Shown here in pieces: positions 11,996 to 22,319 of a stretch of 64,000 nt of DNA. Position 1 is the stretch's first letter; every line of letters begins with the position of its first letter. The notes under the pieces were generated by a model. The model made no database searches. It was not told the DNA's origin and was given only the letters and a program-made list of their open reading frames with translations. This stretch comes from Cyanophora paradoxa CCMP329 (taxonomy: Eukaryota > Plantae > Glaucophyta): assembly GCA_004431415.1 (NCBI GenBank), contig QPMI01000043.1, positions 1 through 64,000 of the forward strand, written 5' to 3'. The position numbers and the translations under genes are program-made.

Positions 11996-12736
11996 ATGCT
12001 GCGCGGCGGGCTCGTCAGCCTCGCGGGGCGCCTGGCTGCCGGCGGCGTGCCCAGGGCGCAGGCGCCGTCTTGCCTGTCTCAGTGCAGGGCATCGCACAGC
12101 AAGATCTTCGTCACTCTCAACAACGACGTCCCCGGGCTCGGCTACAGCGGCGAGGAGGCCGAGGTATCGCGCGGATACGGTGCATCCGTCCGTCTCCACG
12201 CCAGCAGCGCGGCGCGGCGCTGACGCCGCGCAGCCCGAAACTTCCTTGTCCCTCGCGGCCTCGCCCGGATCGTTCCGCTTGTGCGCGGCTTGAGGCGCGC
12301 AAGGCTTGCGAAGCAGAAGAGCCCAGAGGAGGCGCAGGTGCCTCTTGCGCTCCGCGCCTGGCCTCGCGCATGCTGAGGCGAAGCGGTTTAGGCGGCGACC
12401 GGCCCCGAGGCCGAGGAGAAGCGGATGGCCGACATGCTCCGCGGATATCTTTCAAGGAAGCCTCTTAGCTTCAAGCGCCAGATGGGGAAGGACGGTGAAT
12501 CCGCCACCGGGCGCCGCGCGCCCTCCTGGCGCCGACGCGGGCGGGCGGCAGGGCGCACCTTCCAGAGCACGGTGGCGCCGGAGCACGTGGCGAAGTACCT
12601 GCGGGAGAAGGCGAAGTTCGAGGTGGATGCGGGGGACGTGCGCGTGCCGGAGATCAAGGAGCCGGGCGAGTACGAGGGCGGCATCCGCATCGGCGGCGAG
12701 GAGTTCCCCGTCACCCTCTTCGTCGAAGCCCGATAG
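11996..12736 (+). CDS. MRPL9: Organellar (probably mitochondrial) ribosomal protein bL9
   Basis: Arg-rich presequence; VTLNNDVPGLGYSGEEAEVSRGY|ARNFLVPRGLA (L9 N-domain) and IKEPGEY (L9 C-domain). Confidence 0.85.
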
Positions 12737-13010
12737 CGCGCCCCGCCCGAGAGGCTCCTCCCTCCCCCCCTCCTCCCCTGTACTCTACTTGATGGACAGC
12801 GATAGGGCTCCGCATGCGCCCCGCCCGCCCCCGGCCCGCAAGCGAGAACGGAGGCACCGCTTCGTTGCTTGCAGCGCTCCTTCTGCTCTCGGCTCACTAA
12901 TGAGACGGGGAGGCACGAGATGGGATTCGATGGGCGGCGGGCTGCGCGGAGAGGAGCGGGCGCGGCGCTCGCGATCGGGGCGGAGGGTGCTGGAGAGGGG
13001 GGCGTCGGAG

Positions 13011-13881
13011 TCAGGGGCGGGCCTCGCCGAGGGCCGGCGCCGCCTCGGGCTCGGCCTCGAGCTCGGGCTCGCGGCGCAGCGGCCGCCCGTCGTGGTAGAG
13101 CAGCTTCGCGGCGGGGGCGGCCGCCCCGGGGCCGGGCCCCGCAGCGGACCGGGAGGGGCGGGCGGGGCCCCCCGCGGAGACCACCGACAGCCCCGGCAGC
13201 CGCAGCCGCGCCGCCGCGTTCATCTGCGCCCGCGAGCAGTCGGGGGTACGCGCATCGAGAGCGGGGGCTTCGTTCGCGCACGGCGAACTCGGCGACGTCG
13301 AGGGGCGGCTCCGAGGCGGGCTGGAGGGCCCAGAGCACCACGGGCACCTCCGCCTCCACCATCGCCTGCGGGGGGGCCCGGGTTCTAAGCCTTGAAGGGC
13401 GAGCTCGGGGGCCTGTTTCGAGCTCTGAGGCCGGGGGCACCTTGTGGGCCTCGTCGGAGAAGCCGCGGAGGCCGGCGAGGACGCGCACGGCGCCCTCCCC
13501 CCGCTCCCGCGCCCTGCGCCCGAGGGTAGGCTCGAGAGGCCGGCGGGGCGGGGCGCGCGGGGCGGGGCCGGGGGCGCTGACCCGCGGAGCTCGCGGACGT
13601 GGGCCGGCCCGAGGCGGGCGCGCGGCCGCAGGCGGGCCTGCACCATGACGGGCACGGGGTCGCCCTTCCCCAGCCGCCACTCCCCCACCAGGTCCGTCCC
13701 TCTGCGCCCCCGAAGCTCGCGGCGGGGCCGGGGGAGAGGGCGGGGAGGAGGGGCCGGGCGGACGGTCGCGGGGCCCGCCGATGGCCTGGAGCTGAAGGCC
13801 GTAGCAGGAGAGGGTGGCGAGGACCTCCCGCTCGAAGGCCGCCCCGCGCCCCGCCGCGCTCCCCGCCCCCGCCGGCCCCGC
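13011..13881 (-). CDS. RRG7/DUF2034 (Mrr-like, PD-(D/E)XK fold) domain, apparently the C-terminus of the MutS gene
   Basis: Spliced [27 protein letters not shown]|(G)TDLVGEWRL...[23 protein letters not shown]|...[14 protein letters not shown]|[11 protein letters not shown]...FA|[15 protein letters not shown]. One junction needs a shifted acceptor or a 1-bp homopolymer correction. Confidence 0.7.
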
Positions 13882-16800
13882 CTGTGCCGCCCGTCGCGCC
13901 CCGCCCCGCCCCGGCTGGCGCGCGTGGCGGGGGGCCGGCGCGCGCACGGGGACGCCGGCGCCTCCCACGTGCCCGCAGAGTCCGAACCCGCCGCAGCCGC
14001 CGCCGCGGTTTCCGAGCCGGCCCCGATCTCTTCCTCCTCCTCCTCGTCTTCCTCATCCTCGTCCTCGCCCTCCTCGTCCTCCTCGACGGGGCCGTCGTAG
14101 GGACGGGCCACGGTGCCCCCCTGCACGTGCGCCTGCCTCAGCAGCTCCCCCATCCGCTCCTGCGGGGACCTCAGCGCGCAGGCCAGGGGAAGGGACGCGG
14201 GGGCGGGACGGTGTGCGGGCCATCTGGCGGGCGTGCTCGGCGTCGGCGGCGGCGAGCTGCGCGCGGAGCGCCGCCGCCTCCCCCTCCAGCGCCGCCTCCC
14301 GCTCCCCCGAGGACGAGGGAGGAGGAGGAGGAGGAGGAGCGGGCGCCTGGGCGGCGGCGGGGGCTCCCCGGGCGGGCGAGGCGGCGGGGCGGGCGGGGCG
14401 GGGCGGGGCCGGTGGCGGAGAAGAGGGCGGCGAGGGCGGCGGGGGAGACGGTCGGCTGGGCCTCGAGGCGGGCGCGGAGGGCCTCGGCGCGGGCGACGAG
14501 GGCGGGGGGCAGCCCCGCGAGGCGCGCCGCCTCCACCCCGAACGAGCGCCCCGAGTCCCCCGGCCGCACCTCGCCCCGCGCGTCAGCTCCCCGCCGAGGC
14601 GCGGGGGGGGCCCTCCACGGGCTTCGACGCTAGAGCTCTCGGGGAGTCCCCGGGGCGGGCCTCACCTCGTGGGGGAAGTTGAGGAGCCCGTCGGGCCGCC
14701 GCTCCACGATCACCTGCCGCCGCCCTCAGCCCGGGTCCGCCCGCGCGCGAGGGGCGGCGCGGGGGAGGGGCGGGCCTGGAGGCAGGCGGCAGCGCCCGGG
14801 GGCAGGACGCGGGGGAGGTGCGCGAGCTCGTGGAGGTGCGTGGCGAAGAGCGTGCGGCAGCGCGCCTCCGTCGCGAGGTGCGCCGCGACGACCGCCGCGA
14901 TCGAGAGGCCGTCCTGGAACGACGTCCCCCGCCTGCAAAGGGGGGAGGAAGAGAATGAGGCGGAAGCGCGAGGTGTGAATGTGGAGAGGGTGGGGGGAGT
15001 CGGGGGGCGGGTGCGGACCCGACCTCGTCGACGAGAACGAGGGAGCGGGGCGTGGCGTGGGCGAGGATCTCCGCCGTGTCCCGCATCTCCACCGCGAACG
15101 TCGAGAGCCTGCCGCCCCCGGCAAGCTCAGCGCGGCGGGCGGGGCGGGGCGGGCGGGGCGGGCGGGGCGGGCGGGGCGGGCCCTTCGGAGAGCTCGTCGA
15201 GGGCGCCGACGCGGGTGAAGATGCGGTCCGCGATCGGCAGCCGCGTCCCCGCGTCGGCCGGCAGCCAGGAGCCCAGCTGCGCCATCACCTGCCCCGCCCC
15301 CCGCCGGCGGTGAGGCTCGGGGCTGGGGGGAGGGGTCGGGGGCGCGCCTGGAGGAGGCCGGCCATGCGGAGGTAGCAGGACTTGCCGCTCGCGTTGGGGC
15401 CCGTCAGGATCGCCAGCCGCGGGCTCTCCGCCCCACCCGCCTCCTCGCCGGCCCCGCCGTCCACGGGGCGGTGCAGGGGGTCCCCGGGCGGCAGCCGCGC
15501 CTCCCCGCCTGCCGCCGGAGAGTCGGGGCGCGCGCTCGAGGGGGCGGGGCGGGCGCGGACCGCCGAGGGTGACGGAGTTGGGGACGAAGGAGCCGCGGTC
15601 GAGGCGCTGCTCGACGACGGGGTGCCGCCCCCGCACCACCACCATCTGGCCCCCGCGAGCTCGAGCCGCCCTCGCCGGGCCCGCAGAGGGCGCCGGGGGC
15701 GCACGCCGCTGCCGTCGGGGCTCTCGAAGACCTCGGGGCGCGTGTAGTTCCAGTCGTCGGCCACCTGGCGGGAGCCGCTCAGCGGGGCGGGAGGGCGCGG
15801 GGCGGGGCGGGCGGGGGGCGCGCCTGGGCGAAGGAGGCGAGGACGTCGACGGCGGCCACCGCCTCGCTCGCCCGCCGCACCTCCCCGGCCTGCCGCCCCC
15901 CGCCCCGCCGCCCCGCTCGCAGGGGCGGGGCGGGGCCGGGGGAAGGGCGGGGCCGGGGGCGGACGACGGCGGCGACGTCGGCGGCGAGCTCGCGGAGGAT
16001 CTCCGCCTCCAGCTCCGCGATTCGGCGCCCGCCCATCTGCACCTGCCCGCCCCGCGTCGCCCGCCGTGGGGCCGGGGCGGGGGGCGGCGGGGGGCCCACC
16101 TGCTCCCAGGCCTCGACGAGCTCGCGGGTGGTGTACCGCGTGACCGACTTCAGGCGCTCCTCTGCCACGTACTCCGGAGGCACCCGCCCCGTGTCCCGCT
16201 GCGCGGCGTCGGCCCTCGAGGGGGGCGGGGCGGCTGCAGGGGCGCACGGTGGGGACGGCGAGGCGGCAGATGCTCTCCGACTCGAAGAGGCGGAGGCCCC
16301 GGATCCCCGTCCGCTCCTGCTCCCGCTTCTGCCGTCCCGACGCGCGCGTGAGCTGGCGGGGCGGGGCGGGGGCGCCGCTGCGGGGGCGGGCCTCGATGTG
16401 GGCGAGGAAGTCGCGGGCGCGCTTGAGGGCGGCGCGGCTCTCGTCCAGCTCCGCGCTCACCCCCCGCCGCACGGTCGCCCGCTTCTCGCTCACCGCCGGC
16501 GGCGGCACTGCCGGCCCGCCCTCAGCGAAGGGGGCGGGACAGGGCTGGAGGCGGGGCGGGGAGGGGCCGCACCCTCGACGAGGACGCGGCGGACGCGGGC
16601 GGCGGTGGCGCGCAGCGACTCCGTCAGCGACGCCGCGAGCTCCGCCCCGAAGGCCCGCCCAGGCCCCCAGCGCCCCCGACACCTCCTCCACCGCCCCTAC
16701 GCCCCGAGCGTCGCCCCGGGACGGCCGCGCCGGGCGGGCGGGGCGCGCCGACGGAGGCGGCGAGGGCGGAGAGGTCGCGGGCGGCGGAAACGCCGTTCGC

Positions 16801-19173
16801 GACGCGCGTGGCAATGCGCGGGAGGTCGAGCACGCCGTCCAGCGCCCGCCGCACCGCCGCCCGCCCCGCCGCCTCCGCCCGCAGCTCGCCCACCGCGTCC
16901 AGCCGCTGCCCGATCTGCGGCGGAGCAGAGCTCAGGCGGGTCGGCTCAGGAGAGCTTGAGCGAGCGGCGGGCCTCCCGGGGGTCGGTGAGGGGCCGGAGC
17001 ATCCAGGCGCGGAGGAGGCGGGCGCCGACGGCGGTCCGCGTCCTGTCCAGCGCCCAGAAGAGCGAGCTCTGCGGGCCGCGCCGCGCGGCTCAGGGGAGCG
17101 GGGGGAGGGCGGGCGGGCGGGGCCGGGCGGCCCGCTTGGAGGAGGGCCCCTCGAAGAGGTCGAGGTTGCGGCGGGCGACGGCGTCGAGCACCAGCCCGGC
17201 CCCCGCCGCCATCCTGCGGCCCCGCCGGCCCGTCAGGCCCCCGCCCCCGCTGCCGCCGGCCCCCGGCGCACGTGCGGGGCTCGTAGAGCGCGAGGCGCGT
17301 CCCCGCGATGGCCGCCGAGGCCGCCCCCGCCGCGCTCCCCAGCGTCGGCGGGCGGAAGGCCCGGCCCTCGGCGCCCCCATCGCCACCCCGTCCACGTAGC
17401 CGACGATCGCCGCGAGCGCGCGCGCCGCGTGCGGCCGCTCCGCCGCGAAGGCGCCGAGGTCGGCGGGGGCGGCGCCGGCGCCGGCGCCGAGGGGCAGGAA
17501 GCGGCCGGCGAGGCGGTCGAGCTGCTCGAACTCGACGGGCGCCCGCGGCGTGTACAGCAGCGTCAGCGGGAGCCCTGCGCCCCGTCGGCGCGGGCCGCCC
17601 GGGCGGGGCGGGGCGGGGCGGGCACCGGAGTCGATGAGCGGGGAGGTGCTGCCGCGGGGGACGACGCCGAAGCCGCTGGCCTGGAGGTCCGAGGACACGA
17701 GGGCGGGGCAGAGGACCTCGGCGGGGCGCAGCCGCTCGAGCTCGAGGAGCAGCTCGCCGCGGCTGCCCTCCAGCCCGTACGTCTCCCCCGTCGAGACGTC
17801 CGCGTAGGCCAGGCCGCCGCGCGCCCCCGCCTCCCCCTCGGGCGGCAACACGAGCGCCGCCAGCCAGCTGTTCTCGCCCCGCTGCAGCATCGACTCCTCC
17901 AGCAGCGTCCCCGGCGTGATCACCCGCTGCCCGCCCCCCGCCCCCGTCGGCCCCGGCGGGCCCGGAGGCCGGGGCGGGGGGCGGGCGCACCGTGAGGACG
18001 CGGCGGAAGACGTAGCCCTCGTTGTCCTTGCTCTCCCCCGGGCGCAGCTTCTGCGTGGGGTACCGCACGCCCGTGCGCACCTGGTCGCAAATCGCGACAG
18101 AGAAGCCCTGCGCGCGGGCGCAAGGCCCGAGTCGCGCCCAAATGCGCCAGCGGGCGGGGAGGCGGGAGGGGCCAGAGGCGCCTTGCTGATGAGAGTTACT
18201 GCGTACTTGTCGACAGCGTGACTGCCCGGCCCTCAGCCGGCGGCGGCGCAGGTGGGCGGGTGGGCGGGTAGCAGCGCACGCGGGGACGCCGGCCATGGGT
18301 ACGCGGATGCGGCCCTCGGACAGCGGCGCGCCCTCGCCGCGCTTCAGGCCCCGCGCCTTGTAAGCCTCCGCTTTTGCCGTCAGCTGTACCCCCGTCGCCG
18401 CCTTCAGGCTCCGCGCATCCTGCCGCCCCCGTCGGACCCGGCGGCTGTGCTCCGCGCCCTGCCCCGCCCCACCTCAAAGTACGCCTGCGAGAGCGGGGCG
18501 GGCCGTCAGGAGGGGCTGGCCGCCGAGCGCGGACGCTCCGCAGACCTCGTAGAAGTCCCCCACGCGGTACAGAAGGAGCGCCTGCTTAACGTCGTCCTTC
18601 TTTTCTGCGGCGCGCTCGGGCGCGGCCGCACGCACGGGGCGGGACGGCGGCCGCACCGCAGTAGTCCCGCGTGAGGCTGTTCAGGTACTTGCGCTCGACC
18701 GTCTGCGTCGTCAGTTCCGAGATCGGCTCCTTCACCGGCTCCCCGCCTGCATGCGCCGCCCCGCTCACCGCTCGGCGCCCAACGCGGCGCGGGCGCACGG
18801 CGGGGCCGATCGCACCGTCCTCTTCATCGTCGCCGCCCTCCTCGTCCTCGGGCTCTTCGGGGGGGGTGGCGTCCTCGGCTGTCGGATACGCATCGTCTCC
18901 CGTCGCCGCGGACGCGGCGAGCGCCGTGCGCGTCGCGAACTGCCGCGGCGGCGGCCACGCCAGGCCGCCGAGGAACGACCGCCCGGCGAGAAGCGCCGAG
19001 CGCGTCCACGCAACTCTAGCGCCGGCATCTCCGAGCCAAGCAGGTCGCCGTCGCACGAGTGCGACTGCGTTGCGGGTGCGCACGGCCGGCTTGGCGACTC
19101 GCGCCGGTAGCGCGGCCCAGGCGAACATGCGAGTACGCCCAGGCGCTCCCTGACTTGTCGGAGGCACAAACAT
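13011..19173 (-). CDS. mutS: Plastid-targeted cyanobacterial-type MutS1 mismatch-repair ATPase with C-terminal extension (MutS core about 14450-18720)
   Basis: [11 protein letters not shown]|AYFE|[100 protein letters not shown]-terminal transit-like peptide (ATG 19173 or 19128, SFLGG motif). Confidence 0.92.
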
Positions 19174-19359: not shown

Positions 19360-22319
19360 ATGTCGTCGGCCTACGTTGCCCCCTCGCCGCTCGCAGGCAC
19401 CCGCGAGATCGCCACACCGGTGCACTCGGTGAAGGCGGCGTACGCTCAGGCTAGCCGCCCGTCGCGCACCCCCTCCAGCCGCGCCGTCCGGTCGGCGTTC
19501 GGGCAGACACGCTCTGTGCACTCGTTCGACGCCAGCTCGTTCTTTGGCACGTCCCTTCGCCAGGCTCGCGCCCAGCAGCCGATTCGCGCTAGCTACGCGC
19601 CCATATCTGCCAACGCGAGCAGGTGCGCTCCGGACCCGCGCGCAGGCCCTCCCGTCACTCGAGCACCACCCTAGCTCATGCACGTACCTGATTCGCAGCC
19701 CTGCGGTCGCCGACAAGGCCCCCACCGCACCGGTTGAGCTCCCAACTAATGAATCTTCTCCCAAGCTTCTTCGCATCCGTCACAGCTGCGCCCACATCAT
19801 GGCTATGGCCGTGCAGAAGCTGTTCCCTGGCACTCAAGTCATATCCTTTAGGCCCACGCGCTTGCGCTCCTTGCGTGCTAGCTCGCTGCCCCCGACCTTC
19901 CTTGACCGCGTTCCGCCTGCACACCATCGGTCCGTGGATCGACAACGGCTTCTACTACGACTTCGACGTGAAGGAGCCGTTCCAGGAGTCCGACCTTAAG
20001 AAGATCAAGAAGGAGATGGACAAGATTATCAAGCGCAACCTGCCTATCACCTGCGAGGCCCGCCCCGGCCCTTCCGTCCGCGCGTCCGCACCTCACCGTG
20101 CGCTCGAAAACAGGAGGTGACGCGGGAAGAGGCGGAGAAGCGGATCCAGGCGCTCGGCGAGAAATACAAGCTCGAGATCCTGAACGACATCAAGGACGAC
20201 AAGATCACCATCTACTCCATCGGCGAGGAGTGGTGCGTGCGACGCTTCCTTTCCTTTCCTTTCCTTTCCTTCGTGCTCTGCAGGAACGGCGGCTGACGGC
20301 GGGGCGGGCAGGTGGGACCTCTGTGCGGGCCCGCACGTGGAGAAGACCGGCGACATCGCGACGGGCGCCTTCGAGATCGAGTCGCTGGCCGGCGCGTACT
20401 GGCGCGGTGACGAGAAGAACGCCATGCTCCAGCGCGTCTACGGCACCGCCTGGGAGAGCCCCGAGCAGCTCAAGGTCCGCCCGCCAGGGGCCGCCGGGCG
20501 GGGCGAGGCTGACGCTCTCGCAGGCGTACCAGGTGCTGCGCGAGGAGGCAAAGCGCCGGGACCACCGCCGCATCGGCCAGGTGCCGCGCCGCGCCGCGGG
20601 ACGGGCGGGCGCGGGGGCCTCTTTGACGCGGCGGGGCGGCACGCGCAGGAGCTGAACCTCTTCAGCATCCAGGACGAGGCGGGCGGCGGCCTCGTCTTCT
20701 GGCACCCGAAGGGCGCCATCATCCGCCACATGATTGAGAACTACTGGAAGCAGGCGCGGGCCGGCCCCGCGCTCCGCCTCCCGCCGCCCCGCCCCTCCGA
20801 GCCGCCCCGCGCGCAGGCCCACCTCGACGGCGGCTACCAGCTCGTCTACTCGCCGCACATTGCCAATCAGCAGCTTTGGAAGGTGCGCCCCGGCCCGGCC
20901 CGCGCACGCGCGCGCCCGTCGCGCCCCCGGCGAGCGGCGGGGCGCGCAGACGTCGGGCCACCTGGACTTCTACGCGGACTCTATGTTCAACGCCATGTCC
21001 ATCGACGAGGACGCGTACCGCATCAAGGCGCGCCCCGTGGGGCTCGTGCGGGGCGTGGCTGAGGAGATGCTCCTGACGCGCGGGCGCAGCCGATGAACTG
21101 CCCGTTCCACGTGCTGATGTACAAGGACGGCCTGCGCTCGTACCGCGAGCTGCCCCTCCGCTGGGCCGAGCTCGGCACCGTCTACCGCTACGAGCGCTCC
21201 GGTCCGCCCCGCCCCGCCCCGCCCCGCCCCGCCCCGCCCCGCCCGGCCGAGCGGCGGGCGGCAGGGACGCTGCACGGGCTCTTCCGCGTGCGGGGCTTCA
21301 CGCAGGACGACGCGCACGTCTTCTGCCTCCCGAGCCAGGCCCGCCCCCCGCCCCGCCCCCCGCCGCCCCCCGCCAACTCCGCAGGCAGATCGCGGAGGAG
21401 ATCCGGAAGGTGCTGGACCTGGTGGAGGACATCCTCTCCTTCTTCGGCTTCCACAAGTACGAGGTCAACCTCTCCACGCGCCCCGAGAAGAGCGTCGGCT
21501 CCGACGACATCTGGGACAAGGCCACCGTCGCCCTCCGCGAGGCCCTTGACGCCAAGGGCTGGGACTACGCCGAGGACGTCGGCGGCGGCGCCTTCTACGG
21601 CCCCAAGATCGACATCAAGATCCAGGACGCCATCGGGCGCAAGTGGCAGTGCTCCACCATCCAGTGCGACTTCAACCTGCCAGAGGTGCCCCGCCCCGGG
21701 CCCCGGCGGCCCCGGGGACGGCGGCGGGGCGGGGGGCTGAGGGGCGGCGGGGGCAGCGCTTCGACATGGAGTACGTGGCGGCGGACGGGTCGCGGCAGCG
21801 GCCGATCATGATCCACCGCGCCATCTTCGGCTCGCTGGAGCGCTTCTTCGGGATCCTGTGCGAGAACTACGCCGGCGACTTCCCCCTCTGGCTCTCCCCC
21901 GTCCAGGCCCGCGTCATCCCCATCACCGAGCAGCAGGCCGACTACGCCAGCGAGGTCGCCGCCCGCCTCCGCGCCGCCGGCCTCCGCGCCGAGGTCGACC
22001 ACTCCGGCGACCGCCTCGGCAAGGCCGTCCGCAACGCCGAGAAGGCCAAGGCGCGCCCCGCCCCGCCCCCCCTCCCCCTCCCCACCCTTTCCGAACGTAT
22101 TCCTCAACGCCCGGACAGATCCCGGTCATGTGTGTGGTGGGCAAGGAGGAGATGGCGAACGGGGCGGTCAACGTGCGCATCCGGGCGAAGCGGGACGAGA
22201 ACAGCGCGGAGAACGCCGGCGAGATGGGCACGCTCTCCGTGGACGACCTCGCCACGACGCTGCAGGCCGCCGTCGAGAGCCGCCTCACCATCGACGAGTT
22301 CCACAAGCGGCGGCAGTAG
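19360..22319 (+). CDS. thrS: Organellar (plastid) threonyl-tRNA synthetase, cyanobacterial type
   Basis: Transit peptide MSSAYVAP...SSFFG; [34 protein letters not shown]|[62 protein letters not shown]; 13 introns. Confidence 0.97.
19841..19922 (+). other. U12-type (minor spliceosome) AT-AC intron, 82 nt
   Basis: 5' ATATCCTTT, branch site TTCCTTGAC (19898-19906), 3' CAC. Removal restores the conserved QV|TIGPW. Confidence 0.93.

What the first reader, a model, noticed from the sequence alone, without database searches (positions are those of the whole stretch)
13011..19173. Plastid-targeted cyanobacterial MutS1 apparently fused to a C-terminal RRG7/Mrr-like nuclease domain: candidate self-contained organellar repair enzyme
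Seen: a complete MutS1 with the mismatch-binding GDFYE motif and cyanobacterial-type signatures ([21 protein letters not shown]). After its last helix ([11 protein letters not shown], about 14460) there is no intergenic-like DNA or fresh targeting peptide. A Pro/Ala linker, a short coiled coil ([17 protein letters not shown]), an acidic tract and then FE...GGxxD.xDLxGxW...VQxR...GPxxVREL...GFSxEA...MNxxA follow, all carrying this genome's intron signals. Established: MutS-nuclease fusions are known with GIY-YIG (plant MSH1), HNH (octocoral/viral MutS7) and Smr (MutS2); RRG7/DUF2034 is a stand-alone mitochondrial Mrr-like protein. Inference: this may be an independent recognise-and-cut architecture for organellar DNA, one I do not know from described families. 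Caveats: the join needs one 1-bp correction in the GCCCC run at about 14390-14410 or a weak GC donor at about 14461, and such indels occur elsewhere in this window. The QxK catalytic motif reads QAR, so the domain may be altered or inactive.
Basis: partly seen in the sequence, partly recalled or inferred. Interest (0 to 1): 0.9.

Follow-up and report, generated by a model that had tools for sequence, protein, structure and literature searches.

The report
Cyanophora MutS1 with Mrr-like tail
This is the nuclear gene of the glaucophyte alga Cyanophora paradoxa for a bacterial-type mismatch-repair protein (MutS1) that carries a degenerate Mrr-type restriction-nuclease-like domain at its end; the fusion looks real, but it was already described in a 2024 Plant Cell paper.

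Summary
On the minus strand, 19128-13011, lies a gene of about 32 exons. It encodes a complete bacterial-type MutS1: Pfam domains I-V, NCBIfam MutS equivalog 636 bits, FxE motif and Walker A/B. A low-complexity, acidic linker of about 130 aa follows, then a domain that matches Pfam Mrr_cat (24-26 bits, cut-off 21) and RRG7 (22.6-25 bits, cut-off 22).

The organism is Cyanophora paradoxa. The public gene model tig00000169_g11881.t1 (1321 aa) maps exactly on the window and is already fused.

The fusion is not new. The architecture, the Arg-for-Lys change, the shortened Asp spacing, the doubt about nuclease activity and the link to loss of MutL are all in Plant Cell 2024 (PMC12292046).

What I add concerns the junction.
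- It is not cleanly proven.
- The stop at 14171 lies inside a typical GC-AG intron (14220-14160).
- The model's other junction intron (14314-14257) looks like a workaround for a frame error.
- RNA contigs differ from the window by 1-bp indels at three places in this gene.
- The RNA contigs break inside the low-complexity stretch 14306-14420.

Fusion probability is about 0.75. No protein with a similar C-terminal domain turned up in any search. Novelty: already known. Interest: low.

The parts
13011..19128 (-). Whole coding region of the Cyanophora paradoxa MutS1-Mrr_cat-like gene (public model tig00000169_g11881.t1, 1321 aa, about 32 exons)
   Evidence: P0001 found with a MutS exon frame, named by EukProt, mapped exactly onto the window
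18814..19128 (-). First exon: N-terminal presequence ([18 protein letters not shown]...) followed by an acidic stretch; presumed organelle-targeting peptide
   Evidence: Targeting is inferred from the sequence and from the TargetP analysis reported in PMC12292046; it was not tested here
18546..18605 (-). Exon with the mismatch-binding FxE motif (GDFYE, residues 150-154)
15348..15506 (-). Exon with Walker A (GPNASGKS, residues 809-816); both of its borders are seen in RNA contigs
14315..14569 (-). Last MutS exon (end of domain V, ...[11 protein letters not shown]) running on into a Pro/Ala/Ser-rich linker; coding-like in frame f0 down to about 14400
   Evidence: Acceptor at 14570/14569 seen in three RNA runs; codon log-odds +35.6 and +17.5 in f0
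14306..14420 (-). Low-complexity C-rich and CCT/TCC repeat stretch where the reading frame is ambiguous and the RNA contigs break; most likely site of the frame error(s)
   Evidence: The reads tool masked it as a repeat; the contig-length arithmetic in the full report rests; codon scores are ambiguous
14257..14314 (-). 'Intron' of the public model that removes [19 protein letters not shown]; probably coding sequence, skipped by the gene predictor to stay in frame
   Evidence: Coding-like in f1 (+17.2). Lowest C content after the donor of all introns in the gene (0.25, the others 0.40-0.80), G 0.57, no branch-like motif
14221..14256 (-). Linker segment [12 protein letters not shown] in frame f1 (a 36-nt micro-exon in the public model)
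   Evidence: +14.8 in f1
14160..14220 (-). GC-AG intron B (61 nt): donor ATG|GCCCGC, CTGAG 15 nt before the CAG acceptor; contains the TGA (14173-14171) that ends the literal MutS frame
   Evidence: Non-coding in all three frames. Donor hexamer identical to that of the RNA-validated intron 14775-14714. Composition typical of this gene's introns. Splicing itself was not seen in the rows shown
13948..14159 (-). Exon E0: ERMGELLRQ..., acidic tract ([19 protein letters not shown]), Ala/Ser-rich end; includes the ATG at 14153
   Evidence: f2 +20.5, +48.3
13764..13858 (-). Exon E1: motif I (AFEREV) and first half of motif II (GGPRD)
   Evidence: +30.6
13582..13699 (-). Exon E2: second Asp of motif II (TDLVGEW), motif III VMVQAR (Arg in place of Lys), HVRELRG
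   Evidence: +43.5
13441..13513 (-). Exon E3: [24 protein letters not shown]
   Evidence: +30.1
13282..13365 (-). Exon E4: [28 protein letters not shown] (end of the Mrr_cat match)
   Evidence: +49.6
13011..13223 (-). Exon E5 with the stop (TGA 13013-13011); RNA contigs of three runs break exactly at 13223, the predicted acceptor
   Evidence: records 2, 6, 11; +54.8
12858..13010 (-). 3' untranslated region, as far as the RNA contigs reach
   Evidence: X1 record 2 starts at 12858

Best explanation
One nuclear gene of Cyanophora paradoxa encodes one polypeptide. From the N-terminus it has an organelle presequence, a complete cyanobacterial-like MutS1, a flexible linker of about 130 residues (Pro/Ala/Ser-rich, a short Ala/Glu helix, a long acidic tract), and a small Mrr_cat/RRG7-type PD-(D/E)XK-like domain.

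The literal stop codon at 14171 is intronic. It sits in the branch-site-like CTGAG of a 61-nt GC-AG intron. The remaining frame jump, between about 14400 and 14315, comes from 1-bp error(s) in the assembly or, less likely, from the short intron that the public model uses.

Inferred mechanism: the MutS1 dimer scans muroplast (or mitochondrial) DNA for mismatches. The tethered Mrr-like module is brought to the same DNA. Lys of motif III is Arg, and the two Asp residues of motif II are one residue closer than in Mrr enzymes. So the module is more likely a DNA-binding or weak, atypical nicking module than a standard restriction-type nuclease. In a lineage reported to lack MutL, it may supply part of the downstream step.

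Shown: the gene, its domains, and most of its splicing. Inferred: continuity of the reading frame across 14420-14160, targeting, and any activity.
For: Domains: MutS I-V and Mrr_cat/RRG7 in P0001; MutS equivalog; the ten best language-model neighbours of residues 1120-1275 are all Mrr_cat clusters at 0.92, among them one fungal RRG7 cluster.

Gene structure:
- P0001 maps exactly on the window.
- Six introns of the MutS part and the acceptor at 13224/13223 are seen in spliced contigs of three RNA runs.
- Two of those six introns are GC-AG, with donors GCCCGC and GCGCGC.

Junction:
- Only 18 nt separate the TGA from the next ATG.
- The MutS frame is non-coding-like from 14314 to the TGA (-17.4, -16.8, -12.6).
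- Frame f1 is coding-like there (+17.2, +14.8) and has no start codon of its own.
- 14220-14160 is non-coding in all frames and looks like this gene's other introns.
- RNA contigs differ from the window by 1-bp insertions after 16651, 16663 and 17373. The public model dodges these places (no canonical intron for its 17386-17213 gap). Frame errors in this gene are therefore documented.
- By length arithmetic, the RNA contig that carries the last exons (X1 record 2, 1133 nt) reaches at least 176 nt upstream of 14159. The MutS contigs end at about 14402-14446. Both ends fall in or next to the masked repeat 14306-14420. The contig depths are similar: 11.1 against 14.5, 10.6 against 16.3, 8.1 against 9.4.

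Literature: the same architecture and the same residue changes are reported in PMC12292046.
Against: - No RNA contig row shown bridges 14420-14160, so neither splicing of intron B nor the frame across the linker was observed directly.
- Read literally, the window does not give one open frame unless the atypical intron 14314-14257 is used.
- The Mrr_cat score is just under its cut-off in the whole protein (20.7 against 21) and only modestly above it for the excised domain.
- The single-sequence structure model was poor (pLDDT 44.8), and its fold searches were uninformative.
- No protein with a similar C-terminal domain was found, so conservation of the architecture could not be tested.
Confidence: 0.75

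Rival explanations
1. Two proteins, not one. The window sequence is correct and 14314-14257 is not spliced out. MutS1 then ends at TGA 14171 (or, if intron B is spliced, about 35 codons into E0). The Mrr-like protein is made separately from ATG 14153, either from the same (bicistronic) mRNA or from an overlapping transcript.
For: Literal reading of the sequence: stop at 14173-14171, ATG at 14153, a 380-codon open frame from there. No RNA row bridging the junction was shown. The model's bridging intron is atypical. From my own knowledge, bicistronic mRNAs have been described in green algae.
Against: The MutS frame is strongly non-coding-like over its last 140 nt, while f1 is coding-like without a start codon. 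The stop lies in a sequence with all the marks of this gene's GC-AG introns. There is no room for a promoter or untranslated regions. 1-bp discrepancies between RNA and the assembly are documented three times in this same gene. The RNA contig with the last exons extends at least 176 nt upstream of the ATG (arithmetic).
Confidence: 0.2
2. The fusion is real and the Mrr-like domain is an active, mismatch-directed nickase or cleavase. MutS1 would then be a self-contained recognise-and-cut enzyme that replaced MutL/MutH in the Cyanophora organelle.
For: Motif I Glu (E1137), both Asp residues (D1159, D1162) and the Gln of QxK (Q1180) are kept, and Lys is replaced conservatively by Arg. The domain has a strong coding signal, so it is not decaying. 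Glaucophytes are reported to lack a cyanobacterial-like mutL (PMC12292046). MutS-nuclease fusions recur: GIY-YIG in MSH1, Smr in MutS2, DPD1 in Viridiplantae MutS1 (DPD1-type RNase_T fusions seen). From my own knowledge, a few PD-(D/E)XK enzymes such as BamHI and BglII work without the Lys.
Against: Lys of motif III and the spacing of the two Asp residues are reported as essential in Mrr-family enzymes, and both are altered here (PMC12292046; sequence). No relatives exist to show that these residues are under selection. There is no structural support.
Confidence: 0.3
3. The C-terminal match is spurious: the tail is an unrelated alpha/beta domain or disordered extension, not a PD-(D/E)XK fold.
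For: The scores are marginal. There is no PDB sequence match. The fold searches gave kinase lobes and weak rows.
Against: Two related Pfam models pass their cut-offs on the excised domain, and the Mrr_cat match covers positions 6-107 of 115. All ten best feature neighbours are Mrr_cat clusters. The three family motifs occur in the right order and spacing. The predicted secondary structure runs helix, three strands, helix, strand. CD-Search found the same independently (PMC12292046).
Confidence: 0.07

Closest known systems
Cyanophora paradoxa MutS1 with C-terminal Mrr_cat-like extension, as described in 'Expansion of the MutS gene family in plants' (Plant Cell 2024, PMC12292046)
   Same: The same gene and protein. 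The paper reports cyanobacterial-like MutS1, a C-terminal Mrr_cat superfamily hit, Arg for Lys in motif III, a 1-residue deletion between the motif II Asp residues, no close relatives, and a possible link to loss of mutL.
   Different: Nothing in kind. Added here are the RRG7 profile match and an RNA-contig check of the splicing. Also added is the observation that the MutS-to-tail junction of the public gene model rests on one typical GC-AG intron plus one doubtful intron in a region with assembly frame errors.
Plant MSH1 (MutS + C-terminal GIY-YIG endonuclease)
   Same: An organelle MutS-family protein with a C-terminal nuclease-type domain on one chain; the logic is recognise and cut.
   Different: Different MutS lineage and a different nuclease fold (GIY-YIG, not PD-(D/E)XK). 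No GIY-YIG match in P0001.
DPD1-MutS1 of Viridiplantae (N-terminal DnaQ/TREX-like exonuclease fused to cyanobacterial-like MutS1)
   Same: The same MutS1 lineage acquired from the plastid, also joined to a nuclease module (PMC12292046). Such proteins appeared among my MutS hits with an N-terminal RNase_T domain: P0069, P0022, P0016.
   Different: There the accessory domain is N-terminal, an exonuclease, and has an intact active site. Cyanophora lacks it and has the C-terminal Mrr-like domain instead.
Bacterial and plastid MutS2 (MutS core + C-terminal Smr endonuclease)
   Same: A MutS-family ATPase with a C-terminal small nuclease domain.
   Different: MutS2 lacks domains I and II. P0001 has them and scores as MutS1 (636 bits), not MutS2 (145 bits against a cut-off of 400). 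No Smr match.
Fungal RRG7 (PF10356) and bacterial Mrr_cat (PF04471) stand-alone proteins
   Same: Motif order FE ... GGxxDxxD ... VQxK/R ... VREL.G. Profile matches of 22.6-26 bits; feature neighbours.
   Different: Those are stand-alone or have other partners and keep the QxK Lys. Here the domain is fused to MutS1, has Arg for Lys, and has a shorter Asp-Asp spacing.

Membership tests
Bacterial-type MutS1 (mismatch-recognising MutS) | All five MutS domains in order; family profile above its curated cut-off | tested here: met
   Pfam MutS_I to MutS_V all above their cut-offs; NCBIfam NF003810 636.3 bits against a cut-off of 480
Bacterial-type MutS1 (mismatch-recognising MutS) | FxE mismatch-binding motif in domain I; Walker A and Walker B in domain V | tested here: met
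   GDFYE 150-154, GPNASGKS 809-816, [12 protein letters not shown] 885-896
Bacterial-type MutS1 (mismatch-recognising MutS) | Cyanobacterial affinity in a phylogeny | not tested
   Taken from PMC12292046, Fig. 4 as described in its text. My scan of bacterial genomes with the MutS core found nothing, because that tool sees only close relatives
Mrr_cat (PF04471) PD-(D/E)XK restriction-endonuclease domain | Profile match above the gathering score | tested here: inconclusive
   20.7 bits in the whole protein (cut-off 21); 24.2 and 26.0 bits for the excised domain; covers model positions 6-107 of 115
Mrr_cat (PF04471) PD-(D/E)XK restriction-endonuclease domain | Motif II with two Asp residues at the family's spacing, and motif III QxK with Lys (catalytic signature as given in PMC12292046) | tested here: not met
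   GGPRD-RT-D, one residue short; VMVQAR, Arg at 1182. The paper reads it the same way. The exon E1/E2 junction falls between the two Asp residues. Only one canonical GT-AG pair keeps the frame there, so the short spacing is probably not a model artefact
Mrr_cat (PF04471) PD-(D/E)XK restriction-endonuclease domain | alpha-beta-beta-beta-alpha-beta nuclease core fold | tested here: inconclusive
   The predicted secondary-structure order fits, but pLDDT is 44.8. Structure searches were uninformative: best Z 6.8, to a kinase; TM about 0.4, with Mrr_cat clusters at rows 1, 4 and 8
RRG7 (PF10356) | Profile match above the gathering score over most of the model | tested here: inconclusive
   16.3 bits in the whole protein; 22.6-25 bits for the excised domain (cut-off 22), but only model positions 84-153 of 185. 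Best read as the shared Mrr core, not RRG7 membership
Plant MSH1 | C-terminal GIY-YIG domain | tested here: not met
   No GIY-YIG family among the Pfam matches of P0001 at E up to 1
MutS2 | No domains I and II; C-terminal Smr | tested here: not met
   Domains I and II are present, there is no Smr match, and the mutS2 model scores 145.5 bits against a cut-off of 400

The most novel reading that the evidence does not exclude
Despite QxR and the shortened Asp spacing, the tethered Mrr-like module might be a working, MutS-activated nickase that took over the strand-incision step after loss of MutL in the glaucophyte organelle. That would be an independent, PD-(D/E)XK-based version of the 'recognise-and-cut on one chain' solution seen in plant MSH1. 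The idea itself has already been raised in print; only its demonstration would be new.
Probability: 0.2. Interest if true: 0.55.

Novelty: already known. Interest (0 to 1): 0.2.

Why it matters
MutS proteins have repeatedly picked up nuclease modules in organelles. Cyanophora's Mrr-like tail is one more example, so far seen in a single species, in a lineage reported to lack MutL. Because it is already published, the value of this check is narrower.

First, it confirms the architecture from the raw genome and from RNA contigs.

Second, it warns that the published domain picture rests on one automatic gene model. That model's MutS-to-tail junction and several internal exons are shaped by 1-bp discrepancies between the assembly and the RNA. 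Anyone who clones or expresses this protein should first fix the true cDNA.

Tried and rejected
1. Pfam on unspliced downstream frames gave no hit; the exons are too short.

2. Two word-based homologue searches with unspliced frames of the tail were blank. A third, with the public protein restricted to residues 1129-1275, returned only the protein itself.

3. phmmer of the tail against the other 149 MutS hits found nothing.

4. Scans of bacterial/archaeal genomes and of metagenome contigs with the tail were blank, as was the genome scan with the MutS core. tblastn against plasmids gave no match. The PDB sequence search gave only a chance hit at E 0.24. NCBIfam has no model for the tail.

5. 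The single-sequence AlphaFold model had pLDDT 44.8. Its structure searches gave kinase N-lobes at Z below 7 and weak rows at TM about 0.4. I do not use them as evidence. No alignment could be built, because no homologues were retrievable.

6. I rejected it as the main path: 14461-14400 is coding-like in the MutS frame, and the f1 reading of 14346-14315 uses CCT codons that are disfavoured here (-24.7). RNA contig lengths also fit read-through to 14402-14446, though this was not seen directly.

7. A GT donor at 14209 with the acceptor at 14160 runs into a stop (hand check), so I rejected it.

8. An exact look-up of the 380-aa literal open frame in public assemblies found nothing on record.

Exons were searched by reference, and the joined protein came from the tool as P0001.
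Full report
**What is there.** The region is about 80% G+C, so long open frames occur on every strand and frame. Pfam found MutS domains I, II, III and V in successive stop-free frames of the minus strand between 18680 and 14174. It found nothing in the unspliced frames downstream.

**Identifying the gene.** I searched 1.84 billion representatives with one MutS exon frame (17926-17093). One hit stood far above the rest: P0001, 1321 aa. Its source name is EukProt EP00741 Cyanophora paradoxa, tig00000169_g11881.t1. P0001 maps onto the window in about 32 exact segments from 19128 to 13014. It is therefore the public gene model for this very sequence.

**Domains of the public protein.**
- Pfam: MutS_V 203 bits, MutS_III 127, MutS_I 80, MutS_IV 39, MutS_II 27.
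- NCBIfam MutS equivalog: 636 bits against a cut-off of 480.
- Motifs: FxE (GDFYE 150-154), Walker A (809-816) and Walker B (885-896).
- After domain V ends at about residue 996, a 132-residue Ala/Glu/Pro/Ser-rich linker with a long acidic tract follows.
- Residues 1133-1236 then match Pfam Mrr_cat. The score is 20.7 bits in the whole protein and 24.2-26.0 bits for the excised domain (cut-off 21), covering model positions 6-107 of 115.
- The same residues match RRG7 at 22.6-25 bits (cut-off 22), but over the core only.
- A language-model feature search of residues 1120-1275 returned Mrr_cat clusters for all ten best hits at 0.92, including cyanobacterial clusters and one fungal RRG7 cluster.
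- The family motifs are present in order: AFEREV, GGPRD-RT-DLVGEW, VMVQAR, HVRELRG.

**RNA evidence.** Three runs (X1, X3, X5; two studies) hold spliced contigs of this gene. A 2012 run (X8) holds unspliced, genomic contigs. Six introns of the MutS part are seen as skips in all three RNA runs. Once the ambiguity at each joint is resolved, four are GT-AG and two are GC-AG, with donors CAG|GCCCGC and CAG|GCGCGC. Contigs of all three RNA runs break at 13223, exactly at the predicted acceptor of the last exon. X1 record 2 starts at 12858, which gives a 3' UTR of about 150 nt.

The RNA contigs also carry one extra base after 16651, after 16663 and after 17373. At these places the public model uses odd workarounds: a gap at 17386-17213 with no canonical splice pair, and a TAG acceptor at 16697. 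In both places RNA contigs run on past the model's exon end, to 17271 and to 16748. Frame discrepancies between this assembly and the RNA are thus documented in this very gene.

**The junction.** Read literally, the MutS frame (f0) continues from ...[11 protein letters not shown] through a low-complexity stretch to TGA at 14173-14171. An ATG follows at 14153 in another frame.

I scored codons with a table trained on the MutS exons, against the off-frames of the same exons. The results were:
- f0 is coding-like down to about 14400 (+35.6, +17.5).
- 14399-14315 is ambiguous.
- f1 is coding-like over 14314-14221 (+17.2, +14.8; ...[29 protein letters not shown]) and has no start codon.
- 14220-14160 is non-coding in every frame.
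- From 14159 on, f2 and then the model's frames are strongly coding: E0 +20.5 and +48.3, E1 +30.6, E2 +43.5, E3 +30.1, E4 +49.6, E5 +54.8.
- f0 between 14314 and the TGA scores -17.4, -16.8 and -12.6.

The segment 14220-14160 starts with GCCCGC, the same hexamer as the RNA-validated GC-AG intron at 14775. It is C-rich after the donor (0.70) and has CTGAG 15 nt before its CAG, like the other introns of this gene. The stop codon is part of that CTGAG. Splicing it joins ...HARQM (f1) to ERMGELL... (f2) in frame, as in the public model.

To get from f0 to f1, the public model removes 14314-14257. That 'intron' is the compositional outlier of the gene: C 0.25 in the 20 nt after the donor (the others 0.40-0.80), G 0.57, and no branch-like motif. 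It is also coding-like in f1. I think it is more likely a predictor's workaround for one extra or two missing bases in the repeat 14420-14306 than a real intron. Either way the result is one reading frame.

By arithmetic on contig lengths and the exon model, X1 record 2, which carries the last exons, reaches at least 176 nt upstream of 14159. The MutS contigs of X1, X3 and X5 end at about 14402, 14446 and 14441. Both sets end in or beside the stretch that the tool masked as repeat (14306-14420). The depths of the two sets of contigs are similar. This fits one transcript broken by the assembler, but it is not a direct observation.

I put the fusion at about 0.75. The main rival, two proteins from one or from overlapping mRNAs, stands at about 0.2.

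**Prior description.** A full-text search found 'Expansion of the MutS gene family in plants' (Plant Cell 2024, PMC12292046). It states the following:
- The glaucophyte Cyanophora paradoxa has a cyanobacterial-like MutS1.
- That MutS1 has a C-terminal extension weakly similar to the Mrr_cat superfamily (CD-Search, bit score 39.5, E 0.0036).
- No closely related sequences exist.
- Motif III has Arg instead of Lys.
- One residue is missing between the two motif II Asp residues.
- Nuclease activity is therefore doubtful.
- The loss of mutL in Viridiplantae and glaucophytes may relate to the gain of accessory domains on MutS1.

The architecture is therefore already known.

**Is the architecture found elsewhere?** All of my searches were negative or blank.
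- None of the other 149 best MutS representatives has a similar tail.
- The word-based search of 5.8 billion proteins of 727-2312 aa with residues 1129-1275 returned only P0001.
- Scans of bacterial/archaeal genomes, metagenome contigs and plasmids were blank.

This agrees with the paper's remark on the lack of relatives. These tools are not sensitive to distant relatives, though, and fragmentary transcriptome proteins may have been outside the length limits.

**Function.** Shown: an intact MutS1 with all its motifs, and a translated-looking Mrr-like domain. Inferred: organelle targeting, from the N-terminal [11 protein letters not shown]... presequence and the TargetP analysis reported in the paper. 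Also inferred: a mismatch-scanning dimer that carries the Mrr-like module on a long acidic tether.

Because Lys is Arg and the Asp spacing is short, I favour a binding or atypical, weak nicking role (about 0.65-0.7) over a standard nuclease (about 0.3). The E1/E2 exon junction falls between the two Asp residues. Only one canonical GT-AG pair keeps the frame there, so the short spacing is probably real.

The structure could not help. The single-sequence model had pLDDT 44.8. Its secondary-structure order is right for the nuclease core (helix, three strands, helix, strand), but the fold searches were uninformative.

**Verdict.** Novelty: already known. Interest: 0.2. The useful residue is a warning that the exact linker sequence, and several internal exons of the public model, need cDNA confirmation.

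Noticed in passing
window 16651, 16663, 17373 (minus-strand MutS exons): Spliced RNA contigs of three runs carry one extra base at each place relative to the window. The public gene model avoids these places with a non-canonical gap (17386-17213) and a TAG acceptor (16697), and it reads 16696-16574 partly in a doubtful frame ([14 protein letters not shown]...). Either the assembly has 1-bp deletions or the strains differ. X8 showed depth 26.4 at 16651 and 16663 with no contig carrying the extra base, but no X8 contig of this locus was among the rows shown there.
   Followed up: partly
window 13224-18815, introns of the MutS gene: About a third of this gene's introns are best read as GC-AG, with donors GCCCGC or GCGCGC followed by a C-rich stretch. 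Two of the six RNA-validated introns are of this kind (14775-14714 and 15347-15289). That is an unusually high share for a eukaryote. I did not check it genome-wide.
   Followed up: partly
window 12425-12733, + strand: A convergent neighbour gene: the open frame has a weak match to the ribosomal protein L9 C-terminal domain (21 bits, cut-off 23.2). RNA contigs of high depth (about 82-97) lie at 12601-12810. This is probably an organellar L9 gene ending about 50-100 nt from the MutS gene's 3' end.
   Followed up: partly
P0069, P0022, P0016 (hits): These MutS1 proteins have an N-terminal RNase_T (DnaQ-like) exonuclease domain. They correspond to the DPD1-MutS1 fusions of Viridiplantae described in PMC12292046. 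P0069 also has a 235-residue C-terminal tail with only a sub-threshold PC4 match.
   Followed up: partly
P0118, P0135 (hits): These MutS proteins of about 1270-1290 aa carry an intein with a LAGLIDADG homing endonuclease inserted just before or in domain V.
   Followed up: no
window 19700-21000, + strand: The divergent upstream neighbour looks like a threonyl-tRNA synthetase (…[22 protein letters not shown]… in the open frames). I did not examine it.
   Followed up: no
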